DNA of 64,000 bases from assembly GCF_032191835.1 (NCBI RefSeq), contig NC_083243.1:54560001-54624000 (forward strand), read 5' to 3'. The position numbers were made by a program, and so were the translations under genes. The number at the start of each line of letters is the position of its first letter. The stretch's first letter is position 1. The stretch comes from Heteronotia binoei. Lineage: Eukaryota. This document shows, one piece after another, positions 40,599-46,500 of this stretch. The notes below the pieces were generated by a model. It did not search any database, had not been told where the DNA came from, and saw nothing but the letters and a program-made list of their open reading frames with translations.

Positions 40599-43500
40599 CT
40601 GGAGGGGGGAATAAAAGTAATGAAAACAAATAATTGAGAGGGGGCTTTACATCTAAGACTGAATATGCTAGAGATGCAACTAGTTCCTTCCTTCAACTGA
40701 GCAATGGTGCATTAAGGAAGGGACAAAATTACAATATATTTGACTGTCTTCAATAAAAATAGGGAAATTCAGGACTAGACAGAAGGCCAGAAAGCCTGAG
40801 TAGAAGCTGAGCATACAGGTGGTTATACTAAGCACAGAATTAAAGCAAAAAGACCTTACATAGGCAATATAAGAGTTTCTAACATGTGAAGGAAAAAAGT
40901 GAATTCTATAGTAATTAAATTCTATGGTGAGATTCTCCTGCCCAATTTACAGTACACTCTTGCTCAGAGATCAAAATACATGATCTCTAATGCAAGAGGA
41001 AGGATGCTCAAGTGTCACTGCTACTGCTGATTTATTGGTACATGATGCCTATAGTGGCCTTCCCAAACTCATCCATGTCACCTTGGATCACAGGCTGCTA
41101 ATGACTGAATTCTGTATTTTAAAACTTCAGTTACTGAGCAAACAGTCAAATCAAGGGCCCAAGCCAATTCTGCTAGACAGGTATACTTGTGGTGCTTGGA
41201 ATACAAAGCTAAAGTTTCCAGCAGGTTACTGAGGAAAACAGCAACTCTGAACAGCGCACGTTGGGTGATTACAGACCGGCAGTTTGGGCCAACTAAGAGA
41301 TGCCTCTGAAATCAACCCAAAAAATCCTTCCACACACAAACGCCTGCTGCCCTTCCTTGTCCCGTATTCACCCCTGTCCTCCGCAGTGCGACTGAAAAAG
41401 CTACCACTTCCAAAGTGGGAGCAAATTTTTGAGCTGCACGCCAGTTGCCTCTTTGGCGCCTGGAAGTGGAAGGGTGCAAGCGAGGCACCTTGGCAGTGTG
41501 AAACCGCCAAGCTGCCCCAAGTCGCATCAGTTTTTAAAATTAAAACTTTCAGTGTGCATGAGCGCATTTATGCACGCACATGCACATGACTACTGAAAAT
41601 GTATGGGGACAGGAATGGTGTGCAATGGCCATCTGAACATGCCCATGTTGCCCCATGGACAGGATGGGGACGGCTTGTGGGGGAGCATGTGGAGGCTTCG
41701 GGATGGCTCTTTTTGAGCCATTGCAATTTGGGACACCTCCCATCTGCCCCAAAATGCCTGTTTGTTATCAGCCGTTGTTTCCTTAAATAGCCAACTCAAC
41801 AGAAACAGTATCTCTCATACCTGCCAACTAAACAAATTAACAAGTTCAGAGCAGATACTCTTTCTTCATTCTTGTTCTCCTACAACAGAGTAAAGCAGAA
41901 TTAATTCAGCACATGCCTGAAGTTTAGGAAATGTCAACATTCACAATTCTGGACAAATCTGGCAAACATCCAAAACCCCAAATATAAGCTAGTAAACAAC
42001 AACAGTCACTTAAACATGATAGTATTCAAGGTGCATAAAATGGTGAAATTGATACATTTAACATTCTGTGAATGTCAATCAGAGATCATGGTGAGTACTC
42101 AGCATGCTTTTTGTTAGGTTCTGAACTGTCATTCTAAGACGGTATAATGAAAAACACAAAAAATTAACACAAGCCAGATAACTGAATGGAATGACACCCA
42201 TACACTAGAAAATATTTTCTAAATAATTTTAATTTAATAATTTGCTAAGCTTACCTCCAAGACTCTCACTTCAGAACATCTTCTGGCCAACTGCCGAATC
42301 AGGGAGTGAGCCTCTGGTAACAACGGCTTTTCAAGACAGGCCAGCAGAGCATAAAGCCATCTGCCCTGCAGGAATTTAATGGAAGGTGCATCCTGAAAGT
42401 AATGTTTCACTACTGGTACTTTATCCAAGCAAAGTGGGGAAAAGCCAACTCTGGAAAAACATACACCCATGAATGTACTGATCCCAATAACATTACTTTA
42501 ACAGGTCTACAAATTAACCAGCCTGAATAAAAATGATTGTTTTGTAAGTCTATGTCAAATAGATATGCCTGGCATTGTGTACTGGTTAAAATACTAGACG
42601 GATCTGGGAGAGCCAAATTCAAATCCCCACTCTGCATGGAAGCTTGCTGGGTGACCTTGGCCCAGTCACTGAACCTAAACTGTCTCACAGAGTTGTGAAG
42701 ATAAAATGGAAGGGAAGGGACACAATGCTGAAAGCTGCTTTAGGTCCCCACTGGGGAGAAAAGCAGGATATAAACATCTAAAAAAATAAGTCTAATTTAG
42801 CCTGTTAACATGTATCTATCCAGGCAAACTGGGTTGTGCTCAAGGTTTTTAAAGAGCAGACATAGAGCATGCAAATTCCATCTTCATAACTGTTGTGTTA
42901 ACACTAAATTATTTATGTTTCATTTTTGGAGTGTACAGTATTTACAAAGGTTTCTATAAGTTCAGGCAATCATTCTATCTGTAGAGAAAGACCATTCCTT
43001 CTTAAAGGATAAACCAACCCAGGATGCAGAAAACAACAGATCCAGAGAAGCATATTGCTGACAAATGGCATGTCAGCAGGGCCATATAATAGTGGCAAAG
43101 TTCTAATAATGCTTAAGCTGGCATATCACTAAAAGGGACCCCCTGGCTGGCCAAATGTGCATCTGAGCCCCACACTATGGTTGGAAGGGCTGTAATACAG
43201 CAATCTTACTGTCTGGGTCTACTCAGTGCCCGTAACTCTATGATTGTCTCCTGTTCCATGACGGAAGAATGGATAAGGCAGGGATGTAGTAACAAAACCT
43301 GTGTTCTAAATATTTCTAACTTTCCTTCAGCGAAACTTCAAGAGAAACAGTTTCCTCCTCTGCTTTTCAAAAGGAACAAAAGTAAAAGTTACCAGTTCTG
43401 AAGTAAATTCCTTCTCTGCAAACCAGTTTATCAGATATTCCAAGACACTGGTTACTGTTGCCTTTTAAGAAGGAAGAAAAGCAGATATTAAAAACAACAC

Positions 43501-46500
43501 TTTGTATGGTGCCTCCTTATAGTCTTTGCATTGCATTACCAAATAAGATCTATACTTGTACCTCATGTTTCATGAAACACTAGGTATAATCCAGCAACCA
43601 GATGTTTAAATAACTGGCAACTATGGCTTAAGTTCAAATGCAAAGCCCCCATGTGATGCCAATGCAACTTCATATTTTGTGATGCTATGAGATAGCAGCT
43701 GGCAGAGTCTGCCCTAAACATTTTTCCCTACTGTTCCACAAACTGGAGGATCAAACTATAAGTGACAAATATTCTTATATGCATAATGCGAACAAATGTA
43801 CAAATTTGGGTTAACTTATAATTACACTGTGGGTCCAGGTATGCTATAACTTTCAGCAAGCTATCTGTATGATGCTGTTTCGTTTGATAAGAATCATCAT
43901 GCATTCACTGGACACACTGGGAGGGAGAGTGAGCCTGCTGGCTTTACCCCCTGCTTCTGTGCAACTTCCTGATCATCTGCAGGGGCAGCTGTGCCAAGGA
44001 AGTGGCCTTGTGAACTCTCCTTCCCCACTGATCAGGATGGAGAGTTGGAGCAGTTGCTCCTGCAAACAACCAGGGGGGCTGCTGTCACATGCACCAGGCT
44101 ACCCTTATGGAAGGATGTCTAAATAAGTAACAACACAGCTACAAAGAATTCACCACCAATCCCATTTAAGAAAGATAGTAGCAGATACCTGATTCATTCT
44201 GCTAACAATGCTCAGCAATGGAGGAAAGCCAACCTGGAGTGGGGAAGCCATCAGAATATGTAAGAAACAAAAGTACTTATAGGAAATCTAAATGAATGCA
44301 AATGTGCAAGCTATCAACTTTTATCAAAGATTTCAGGTTTTCACGGCTGGTAACATCATTAGGGTTTGTAGAATCTTTCGGGATCAAGTGCTGTGTTCTA
44401 CTGGAGAAAGTTTTCCTTCCAGGTGTTTCGTTCTCAGCTGCGGAGAACATCCTCAGTGGCGTTGCAGCCGGAGCAGGCGCTCAGACCTTCTTGGCTGCTG
44501 TGCATTGAGTGGGGCCAGGGCTGCTGGAGAGCTGCTATTTGTAGGCTGGAGGGGGTGTGATGAAAGGGCAATTGGTTTGTGGATGTTCCCATTGTTTGGT
44601 GGGGCTTCCTGGAAGGGTAGTGATAAGGAAACTGGCTGTTGAATGTGACCTGTGTTAATTGCTGGGAAGGTTGGAAGGGGTTTGAAGATAAGGAAGATGG
44701 TTGTTGACTGTGCTGATTGTTCTGTGGAATTTGCTGGTTGTTCTGAGACTTTCTGCAATTTATAGTCTGTAGGGTGTTTTGCAGAGCTGGGTACCAAGAT
44801 TGGTGGATGAAAATGCCTTCTTCCTTTCTGTTAAAATTGTGCTGGTGTTTGTAAATCTCAATAGCTTCTCTGTTCAGGCGGGTATGATAATGTGAGACCG
44901 TAGAAAGGACTTCAGTTCTTTCAAAGTGGATGACGTGGTCTCCTTCTTGAAGTGCATGTTCAGCTACAGCTGATTTTTCTGGCTGAAACAAGCGACAGTG
45001 TCTCTTGTGTTCGGTGAGACGGGTGTTGATACTGCGTTGGGTACTGCCAATGTAGACTGCACCACAGGAGCAGGGTATTTTGTAGACTCCAGGGGTTGAA
45101 AGTGGATCTCTCATATCTGTCACCGACCGCATTGGCAAAATTCTCAAATGCCATAATGTTGACACAGTCTTCAAGCCCACACAACAGATCTGCCACATGC
45201 TGCGCTCGGCCAAAGATATGAGAGATCCACTTCAAGAAGGAGACCACGTCATCCACTTTGAAAGAACAGAAAGGAAGAAGGCATTTTCATCCACCAATCA
45301 GCACAGTCAACAACCATCTTCCTTATCTTCAAACCTTCACACCCCCTCCAGCCTACAAATAGCAGCTCTCCAGCAGCCCTGGCCCCACTCAATGCACAGC
45401 AGCCGAGAAGGTCTGAGCGCCTGCTCCGGCTGCAACGCCACTGAGGATGTTCTCCGCAGCTGAGAACAAAACGTCTGGAAGGAAAACTTTCTCCAGTAGA
45501 ACACGGCACTTGATCCCGAAAGATTCTACAAACCCTAATATCAACTTTTAACTTTGTGCTTTCTACCTACCTGTACATAATCAATTCCTTGATTTTCATC
45601 ACAGGATACTTGAACACCTGTATTTAAATACAACTTTTCACCCAGACAAAACTTTTTCCAGCCTTCTTCGTCATCTGGTTTGGGCTGCAGAAATCAAGCA
45701 AACAAGTTTATTTTCCCTATTTTAATAAAACAAAAATATTGTACCTCCCCAAGATCACACACAAATGTTAATTCTACATTTTTAGTTTATAATAAAGAAC
45801 TAACCTGTTGTCTATCTCTACTCAATGAGAAGAGAAAAAGAATGGTGCCCCAAAAGATACTCACCATTGTAACGTTACTGTCCAAATGCTGGGATTTCCA
45901 GTGGTCCCTGTGTTTGTTCACACTCTGGAAAATTGAAAAAGTAAAATCTCATAAGAACTTTTTCACTACAGTTGCAGTGTTTAGTCCAGTTATTCAGATC
46001 AACTGATCAAAAGTTATTCAGATCAACTTCTGACCAACTGAAAAGATGCCCCCAATTATTCAAGCAGATATTTAATAACTGATTTTTTTTAAAAAAAGTA
46101 CTGATACAAGTTGCAGATGCGAAACAACAGCTGAGAAGAGGCATTTCCTTCACTCTCATACACAAAGACTGCTTGTAATATAGATGAACTACCTAAAAAA
46201 ATACATGTATTACCTAAAAACAAAATCAAGCCTTTTTCTTTAGAGCTGTTTTTACTCAGATGCAAATTTATAAAGATTTAATGAACTGCCTAATTTCATC
46301 AACAGCAAATGATGGGTGTCAGCCTGCATCCTATACTTCCTTTGGATTTGCACACCTCTTTGATCTCTTTTGAGGCAGTGCTCTATTGCATAGTGCACTT
46401 CCACTCAGCTACACTGCCTTTTCTGGAGCCAAGAAGTGGCTAGCACAAGAGGAATATGCTCTGCAGTGGAGGACTGCCTCTGCAGATGATGGAGAGGACC

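What the first reader, a model, noticed from the sequence alone, without database searches (positions are those of the whole stretch)
44312..45550. Fold-back Penelope insertion made in one event: two head-to-head arms inside one 12-bp TSD
Seen: the minus-strand arm (45118 to 44324) carries the GIY-YIG domain and pLTR. The plus-strand arm (45119 to 45538) starts with the upstream linker [38 protein letters not shown] and ends in the same pLTR. Both 3' ends point outward and the unit is bounded by TATCAACTTTTA on both sides. Terminal arms 44358-44560 and 45337-45539 match at 198/203 nt. Known: PLEs form partial tandem and inverted pLTR structures, and L1 twin priming creates inversions. Inference: both target strands were primed on PLE RNA and two cDNAs, each carrying the 3' end, were joined, which differs from classical twin priming where the arms do not overlap.
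Basis: partly seen in the sequence, partly recalled or inferred. Interest (0 to 1): 0.7.

Follow-up and report, generated by a model that had tools for sequence, protein, structure and literature searches.

The report
Ordinary two-armed Penelope retroelement insertion
A dead, front-truncated Penelope-like jumping gene landed once in a tiny intron of a gecko gene as two mirror-image copies inside one 12-base target duplication. This is the published standard layout for this element class, and it fits test-tube evidence that the element's enzyme copies its RNA from both cut DNA strands.

Summary
Inverted arms 44358-44560 and 45337-45539 match at 198/203. An exact 12-nt duplication, TATCAACTTTTA, bounds the unit (chance about 8e-5). 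The minus arm encodes a Penelope-type GIY-YIG endonuclease, and the plus arm begins with the linker just upstream of it.

- Only the minus arm carries a 34-nt "tail".
- Measured from an ATG inside a hammerhead-like motif, the two outer ends lie at +93 and +127. By eye these match the two reverse-transcription start sites mapped for the Anolis element Poseidon_Ac (PAc).
- Each arm holds sequence the other lacks, so neither can be a copy of the other.
- The central joint sits at an imperfect 13-nt inverted repeat.

The one-event, both-strands-primed reading is the best explanation (about 0.75). It is not new. An inverted 5'-truncated copy, one TSD around the whole unit and a tail at one end is the published "typical Penelope structure" (PMC3846280, PMC8557442). 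PAc protein cleaves and extends both target strands in vitro (PMC11167929). This scan has already logged several such fold-backs elsewhere in the same genome.

Interest is low to moderate: the locus is a clean natural example, not a new kind.

The parts
44312..44323 (.). Left copy of the 12-nt target-site duplication TATCAACTTTTA
   Evidence: Exact direct repeat with 45539-45550. Not extendable on either side. Chance about 8e-5.
44324..44357 (-). 34-nt 'tail': element sequence beyond the shared arm, present only on the minus arm. Its outer end is +127 from the ATG at 44450.
   Evidence: Alignment of the arms and distances. Same size as the roughly 34-nt PAc tail at nt 85-119, and by eye the same place (PMC11167929 supplement).
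44358..44560 (-). Terminal inverted-repeat arm (pLTR-equivalent 3' region). It contains a hammerhead-like core (44456 to 44422) and the ATG at 44450 that opens a 42-codon ORF start.
   Evidence: Layout compared by eye with the PAc consensus. No Rfam hammerhead hit at E<=10.
44324..45118 (-). Whole minus arm: a 5'-truncated PLE copy (end of the linker, GIY-YIG endonuclease, C-terminal and 3' region, tail) with no internal deletions.
44773..45117 (-). GIY-YIG endonuclease coding part.
   Evidence: tblastn at 58-73% identity to P0001-P0014. P0002 carries PF01541 in the aligned stretch. The window's own Pfam hit is only T5orf172, E 0.0016-0.0056, below cut-off.
45119..45213 (+). 95 nt private to the plus arm: the RT-EN linker just upstream of the point where the minus arm stops.
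45214..45336 (+). Four short blocks, each 100% identical to the minus arm. They are joined across deletions of 150, 85, 83 and 117 nt, with 5, 3, 5 and 0 nt of microhomology (one odd T at 45336). No GT..AG ends.
45337..45539 (+). Terminal inverted-repeat arm of the plus copy. It ends at +93 from its ATG (45447) and has no tail.
45539..45550 (.). Right copy of the TSD.
45119..45131 (+). First 13 nt of the plus arm, at the head-to-head joint. They are 9/13 complementary to 45201-45213 (core 45123-45131 against 45201-45209, 8/9).
   Evidence: inverted repeat I5; P about 1e-3 binomial, 7e-4 empirical.
45571..45684 (-). Host exon upstream of the insertion ([18 protein letters not shown]...GIDYVQ). 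The insertion lies 32 nt into the following intron.
   Evidence: The gene name GEMIN2 rests on my own knowledge and on note s1-322699.
44189..44233 (-). Host exon downstream ([15 protein letters not shown]).

Best explanation
This is one insertion of a Poseidon-type Penelope-like element (PLE) into an AT-rich site of a 110-nt host intron.

Shown:
- Staggered cuts 12 nt apart left two target 3'-OH ends, which is what the TSD records.
- On each side, the strand whose 5' end abuts the target is antisense to the element. That is the geometry expected if both 3'-OH ends primed reverse transcription of sense PLE RNA.
- The two outer ends lie 34 nt apart on the element, at +127 (with tail) and +93 (without tail) from the ORF start.

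Inferred:
- The top-strand cDNA ran 795 nt and stopped at the start of the endonuclease.
- The bottom-strand cDNA reached 95 nt further, but either skipped four stretches at 0-5 nt microhomologies or copied an RNA that was already deleted.
- The two cDNAs have the same sense, so they can pair only at self-complementary sequence. Their 3' ends met at an imperfect inverted repeat in the RT-EN linker, and each was then extended on the other.
- After insertion the arms picked up 5 transitions, 4 of them at CpG.
For: - A single exact 12-nt TSD surrounds the whole unit, and neither arm has a repeat of its own.
- Arm asymmetry: the 34-nt tail and 435 nt occur only in the minus arm, and 95 nt occur only in the plus arm. 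A snap-back copy of one cDNA is therefore excluded.
- The outer ends are +93 and +127 from the ATG at 44450. In the related Anolis element PAc the roughly 34-nt tail spans nt 85-119 and equals the stretch between two RT start sites (PMC11167929). Shared motifs (CGAAAC at nt 21-26, CCCGAAAGA, ACAA.CCCT, TGAAA.CCT) put our ends within a few nt of those sites. That alignment is by eye against the sequence shown.
- The target is AT-rich (TSD 10/12 A/T), as reported for PLE endonucleases.
- The retained internal blocks are 100% identical. The 5 differences are all transitions, 4 at CpG, which fits two arms that began alike at the same time.
- The joint lies at a 9/13 complementary pair of sites. 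This fits the 'palindromes at the inverted junction' reported for PLEs (PMC3846280).
Against:
- The correspondence with the PAc RT start sites rests on an alignment by eye, not on a computed one.
- The family consensus is unknown. I therefore cannot tell whether the four deletions arose during this event, were already in the RNA, or came later through palindrome instability.
- The 9/13 joint complementarity is a post hoc observation. The linker RNA does not fold better than shuffles (z -0.89).
- PAc extension of both strands is an in vitro result on a target made from its own sequence.
Confidence: 0.75

Rival explanations
1. One target-primed cDNA was made. Its 3' end then snapped back on an internal complementary site (self-priming) and copied itself, giving the second arm. 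The tail and the deletions arose later.
For: The joint is exactly where a cDNA ending at 45119 could pair (9/13) with its own 45201-45213 segment and restart at the base where the minus arm begins. Self-priming at palindromes is the published proposal for PLE inverted repeats (PMC3846280).
Against: - A self-copy could not contain the 34-nt tail, which is element sequence homologous to PAc, nor the 435 nt missing from the plus arm.
- The plus arm's 95 private nt cannot come from the minus arm.
- A snap-back copy would run on into the target and give an inverted flank, not a direct 12-nt TSD.
- Four later deletions confined to one arm, alongside only 5 substitutions, is an unlikely history.
Confidence: 0.1
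2. The two arms came from two separate events. Either a second PLE copy inserted exactly at the 5' end of an older truncated copy, or a later inverted duplication or rearrangement produced the second arm.
For: PLE endonuclease can home to PLE sequence (PMC11167929), and TSD-less PLE insertions exist (PMC3846280).
Against: - Neither arm has its own flanking repeat, and the only TSD spans both.
- The second copy would have had to land to the base between the first copy's truncated end and its TSD.
- The arms differ by only 5 transitions in 203 nt, with zero differences in 135 nt of internal blocks.
- A duplication could not add a tail or the 95-nt linker.
Confidence: 0.05
3. The unit is a retro-copy of an older genomic fold-back, or belongs to a non-autonomous family that already has this two-armed, deleted structure.
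For: Deleted and non-autonomous PLE derivatives are known (PMC8557442). I could not survey the genome for copies sharing the deletion ladder.
Against: A transcript of a fold-back has only one 3' end, so the other end of the new copy would be an arbitrary 5' truncation. Here both ends fall on RT start positions. There is no second copy in the 64-kb window.
Confidence: 0.05
4. The palindrome is an assembly artefact, such as a fold-back chimeric long read.
For: PLE tandem and inverted structures are known to cause assembly problems (PMC8557442).
Against: Artefactual fold-backs are symmetric. Here the arms differ by a tail, 95 nt, four deletions and 5 substitutions, and the unit sits between a direct TSD inside an otherwise intact 110-nt intron with both splice sites.
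Confidence: 0.03

Closest known systems
Typical EN+ Penelope-like element insertion: inverted 5'-truncated copy, one TSD around the whole unit, 30-40 nt tail at one end (Arkhipova et al. 2013, PMC3846280; Craig et al. 2021, PMC8557442)
   Same: Head-to-head inverted terminal repeats, a single TSD (8-10 bp in A. vaga, 12 bp here), a 34-nt tail on one end only, 5' truncation, microhomology-joined internal deletions, and complementarity at the inverted joint.
   Different: There is no full-length ORF and no direct pLTR pair. Both arms are truncated copies, so this is the minimal form of the layout. One arm carries a four-step deletion ladder.
Poseidon_Ac (PAc) of Anolis carolinensis and its in vitro reaction (PMC11167929)
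   Same: - The RT-linker-GIY-YIG order.
- About 65% identity in the endonuclease (counted by eye).
- The same CUGAGGA|AUG...GAAAC hammerhead/start-codon layout.
- Two insertion termini about 34 nt apart near nt 85-120 of the ORF.
- An AT-rich target.
- In vitro, both target strands are cut and extended.
   Different: This is a gecko family, not PAc. The hammerhead-like core is changed in both arms and is not recognised by Rfam. The paper does not itself derive the inverted genomic layout from extension of both strands, so that link is inference.
L1 twin priming (my own knowledge of the LINE-1 literature)
   Same: The second target strand also primes reverse transcription, which gives an inverted segment within one TSD.
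   Different: In twin priming the second primer anneals inside the same RNA. The two segments are therefore consecutive and do not overlap, and only one carries the 3' end. Here both arms start at the element's 3' initiation sites and overlap by at least 338 nt of shared sequence.

Membership tests
Penelope-like elements, canonical C-terminal EN+ (Penelope/Poseidon type) | GIY-YIG endonuclease of PLE type, C-terminal to an RT | tested here: met
   The window aligns at 58-73% identity to proteins with PF01541 (P0002) and with PF00078 upstream of the aligned part (P0007). The motif [14 protein letters not shown] matches the PAc sequence by eye. The window's own Pfam hit is only sub-threshold T5orf172. 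The RT itself is absent because of 5' truncation.
Penelope-like elements, canonical C-terminal EN+ (Penelope/Poseidon type) | Terminal repeats (pLTR) in direct or inverted orientation, with an inverted 5'-truncated copy | tested here: met
   203-nt inverted arms at 98%. The layout is as described in PMC3846280 and PMC8557442.
Penelope-like elements, canonical C-terminal EN+ (Penelope/Poseidon type) | [quoted passage not shown] | tested here: met
   The 34 nt at 44324-44357 occur on the minus arm only.
Penelope-like elements, canonical C-terminal EN+ (Penelope/Poseidon type) | Short, variable TSD at an AT-rich target | tested here: met
   12-nt exact TSD, 10/12 A/T.
Penelope-like elements, canonical C-terminal EN+ (Penelope/Poseidon type) | Hammerhead ribozyme motif in the pLTR | tested here: inconclusive
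   No Rfam hammerhead match at E<=1 over 43500-46500 or at E<=10 over 44324-44620. By eye, CUGAGGA + AUG + a 6-bp stem (GUUCUC/GAGAAC) + GAAAC has the same layout as the active PAc motif. Each arm carries a different transition in or next to the core.
L1-type twin priming product | Inverted and direct segments are consecutive, non-overlapping parts of one RNA; poly(A) at one end only | tested here: not met
   The arms overlap over the whole 3' region, both carry the 3' end, and there is no poly(A).

The most novel reading that the evidence does not exclude
The locus may be an in vivo footprint of symmetric target-primed reverse transcription by a dimeric PLE particle. One arm would start at each of the two mapped RT start sites. 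The two same-sense cDNAs would be joined where the element carries a conserved inverted repeat: the TDR/RSA codons of the RT-EN linker, also present in Anolis PAc with one compensatory third-codon change. If fold-back joints across the family cluster at such self-complementary sites, that would give a general rule for how PLE inverted repeats form. It would also replace the antisense-template self-priming model.
Probability: 0.12. Interest if true: 0.5.

Novelty: new member of a known kind. Interest (0 to 1): 0.22.

Why it matters
The PLE transposition cycle is still called undefined in the literature. This copy is a tidy natural example showing that the two arms of a fold-back are separate RNA-templated products rather than a snap-back copy, and that the arms can use the two alternative initiation sites. 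That agrees with the 2024 in vitro work on a lizard PLE. As a single locus it illustrates the model and does not prove it. The layout itself is textbook for the class and common in this genome.

Tried and rejected
- **Sequencing runs:** The stretch contains two conserved host exons. I sent no exon letters to any search tool afterwards. Only the PLE part went to the protein word search, Pfam and Rfam.
- **Rfam hammerhead:** nothing at E<=1 or E<=10. The only match at E<=1, a MIR6140 hit at 45097-45235, is just the 19-nt inverted repeat and is meaningless.
- **Splicing as the cause of the four deletions:** no GT..AG ends in any register.
- **Other copies of the family in the window:** none by blastn or tblastn.
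- **Gecko copies in the protein collection:** none. The best hit is 70% identical, from a beetle, so the look-up of encoding contigs offered no route to a family survey.
- **Linker hairpin stability:** z -0.89, not significant. That fold also included 7 nt of the other arm by my own slip.
- **Pyatkov et al. 2004 (PMC522041):** not held.
- **Computed alignment to the PAc consensus:** left out because the sequence has no reference id and would have had to be typed. The comparison was done by eye on short motifs.
- **Host gene protein:** the joined spliced protein was not built or searched.

Full report
**1. What is there**

- A 203-nt inverted repeat (44358-44560 and 45337-45539, 198/203) forms the outer parts of two head-to-head arms.
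- An exact 12-nt direct repeat, TATCAACTTTTA, lies at 44312-44323 and 45539-45550.
- The bases on either side of the two repeat copies differ, so the repeat is exactly 12 nt.
- Using the window's own rate of 12-mer direct repeats, about 8e-5 such pairs are expected at these boundaries.

**2. Identity of the element**

The minus arm read in sense (45118 to 44324) begins [25 protein letters not shown]....
- The protein word search found 17 relatives at 39-73% identity. Some carry PF01541 (GIY-YIG), PF00078 (RVT_1) and PF26215.
- A Pfam rescan confirmed GIY-YIG in P0002, inside the stretch that aligns to the window. It also confirmed RVT_1 in P0007, upstream of that stretch.
- The window's own fragment reaches only a sub-threshold T5orf172 hit, a GIY-YIG-related family.
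- The first 114 nt of the plus arm (VTDRIGK...[12 protein letters not shown]) align to the residues of the same proteins just N-terminal of the endonuclease.
- By eye, both the protein and the 3' nucleotide region are clearly homologous to the Poseidon_Ac (PAc) consensus of Anolis carolinensis, printed in the supplement of PMC11167929.
- Earlier notes of this scan call the genome a gecko.

**3.

- *Tail.* The minus arm runs 34 nt further at its 3' end (44324-44357) than the plus arm.
- *Private 5' sequence.* The plus arm reaches 95 nt further 5' (45119-45213) than the minus arm, which stops at 45118.
- *Deletion ladder.* Between 45214 and 45336 the plus arm is four short blocks, each 100% identical to the minus arm. 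They are joined across deletions of 150, 85, 83 and 117 nt, with 5, 3, 5 and 0 nt of microhomology. None has GT..AG ends, so they are not introns. The same window carries a separate first-reader note on this ladder (s1-322698).
- *Arm differences.* All five are transitions. Four are CpG in one arm against CpA/TpG in the other, and losses occur in both arms. That is what decay after insertion from two like sequences would give.
- *Hammerhead-like motif and ORF start.* The shared arm contains CUGAGGA followed directly by AUG, a 6-bp stem (GUUCUC/GAGAAC) and GAAAC. The ATG (44450 on the minus arm, 45447 on the plus arm) opens an [16 protein letters not shown].... PAc has the same layout: the hammerhead core comes just before the start codon and the ORF starts at stem II (sequence). 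Rfam does not report a hammerhead here at E<=10, so I call it hammerhead-like only.
- *Positions of the arm ends.* Counted from that ATG, the plus arm ends at +93 and the minus arm at +127.

**4. Comparison with the literature**

- Arkhipova et al. 2013 describe the "typical Penelope structure". [quoted passage not shown] They also report 5'-truncated members flanked by inverted pLTRs, microhomology-mediated internal deletions, and palindromes at the inverted junction. Head-to-head is the most frequent arrangement (PMC3846280).
- Craig et al. 2021 say the same of PLEs in general. [quoted passage not shown] They note that the transposition cycle is still undefined (PMC8557442).
- The 2024 in vitro study of PAc reports several relevant results (PMC11167929):
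  - Reverse transcription starts inside the RNA, at sites that do not differ between the strands.
  - The roughly 34-nt tail (nt 85-119 of the ORF) is the stretch between the two start sites.
  - The target is AT-rich.
  - The protein is predicted to be a dimer.
- Shared short motifs (CGAAAC at nt 21-26 in both elements, CCCGAAAGA, ACAA.CCCT, TGAAA.CCT) place our +93 and +127 within a few nucleotides of PAc nt 88 and 118. This alignment is by eye.

**5. Mechanism**

*Geometry.* At the left, the + strand runs from the TSD straight into antisense element sequence. At the right, the - strand does the same. Each arm's antisense strand is therefore joined by its 5' end to a target 3' end that carries the TSD. 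That is what target-primed reverse transcription from both nicked strands produces.

*Independence of the arms.* Both outer ends are RT start positions, one of each kind. Neither arm can be a copy of the other, since each holds sequence the other lacks. This rules out a plain snap-back copy of one cDNA. A snap-back copy would also have copied the flank in inverted order rather than leaving a direct TSD. Up to this point the argument rests on what the sequence shows plus published enzymology.

*Joining (inferred).* Two cDNAs of the same sense can pair only at self-complementary sequence.
- The first 13 nt of the plus arm (45119-45131) are 9/13 complementary to 45201-45213, the 13 nt just before the point where the minus arm stops (core 8/9). 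P is about 1e-3 for one fixed pair of sites.
- The 3' ends of the two cDNAs could therefore have annealed there and been extended on each other.
- PAc has a perfect 7-nt inverted repeat at the same codons (TDR and RSA), with one pair changed on both sides at third-codon positions (by eye).
- The RNA fold of the linker is no better than shuffles (z -0.89), so I give this little weight.

*Deletion ladder.* It may be RT jumping during this event, a pre-deleted RNA template, or later loss in an unstable palindrome. I cannot tell which.

**6. Rivals**

- Two sequential insertions or a later rearrangement fail because neither arm has a TSD of its own and the fit is exact to the base.
- A retro-copy of an older fold-back fails because a transcript has only one 3' end.
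- An assembly artefact is unlikely because the arms are asymmetric and diverged, and the unit lies inside an otherwise intact small intron.

None of these is formally excluded without reads or an empty site.

**7. Context**

- The insertion lies in a minus-strand intron between the exon 45684-45571 (...[13 protein letters not shown]...GIDYVQ) and the exon 44233-44189 ([15 protein letters not shown]).
- From my own knowledge of the human protein these are GEMIN2 exons. Note s1-322699 also names GEMIN2 in this window.
- The intron is now 1337 nt. Without the insertion it would be 110 nt. The TSD occupies intron positions +21 to +32.

**8. Verdict**

The thing itself is the published standard layout of a PLE insertion, and the key enzymology is already in print. 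This scan has logged the same kind of fold-back on other DNA of the same genome several times (s1-340708, s1-330117, s1-323887, s1-330100, s1-341868). It is a new member of a known kind. Its modest value is as a clean asymmetric example that argues against snap-back copying.

Noticed in passing
window 44189-44233 and 45571-45684 (minus strand); intron 44234-45570: The 1.2-kb fold-back sits 32 nt downstream of the 5' splice site of what was a 110-nt intron of a gene I take to be GEMIN2. The intron is now 1337 nt. The pre-mRNA would carry a roughly 200-bp near-perfect hairpin that brings the two original intron halves together.
   Followed up: partly
window 44773-45117 (minus strand); proteins P0001-P0014: The closest proteins in the 5.8-billion collection come from insects (the rhinoceros beetle Trypoxylus dichotomus and the cockroach Periplaneta americana) at 58-73% identity. 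That is about as close as the Anolis Poseidon_Ac endonuclease (about 65%, by eye). No squamate copies are in that collection. This could be a sampling effect or a hint of horizontal transfer.
   Followed up: no
window 44422-44456 (minus strand) and 45441-45475 (plus strand): A hammerhead-like core (CUGAGGA, start codon, 6-bp stem, GAAAC) has the same layout as the experimentally active PAc ribozyme, yet no Rfam model scores it at E<=10. Three of the five differences between the arms fall in or next to this core, and they are different ones in each arm.
   Followed up: partly
window 45123-45131 and 45201-45209: An 8/9 inverted repeat links the TDR and RSA codons of the RT-EN linker. Anolis PAc has a perfect 7-nt inverted repeat at the same codons, with one pair changed on both sides at synonymous positions. 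It may be a conserved stem. The fold-back joint lies at its two feet.
   Followed up: partly
window 44562-44712: Three copies of a 26-nt unit at 60-65 nt spacing lie in the element's 3' region. Here the endonuclease reading frame stays open as a Q/S/P-rich extension up to 44434, running through the hammerhead-like motif. The 117-nt deletion in the plus arm removes two of the three units.
   Followed up: no
   Followed up: no
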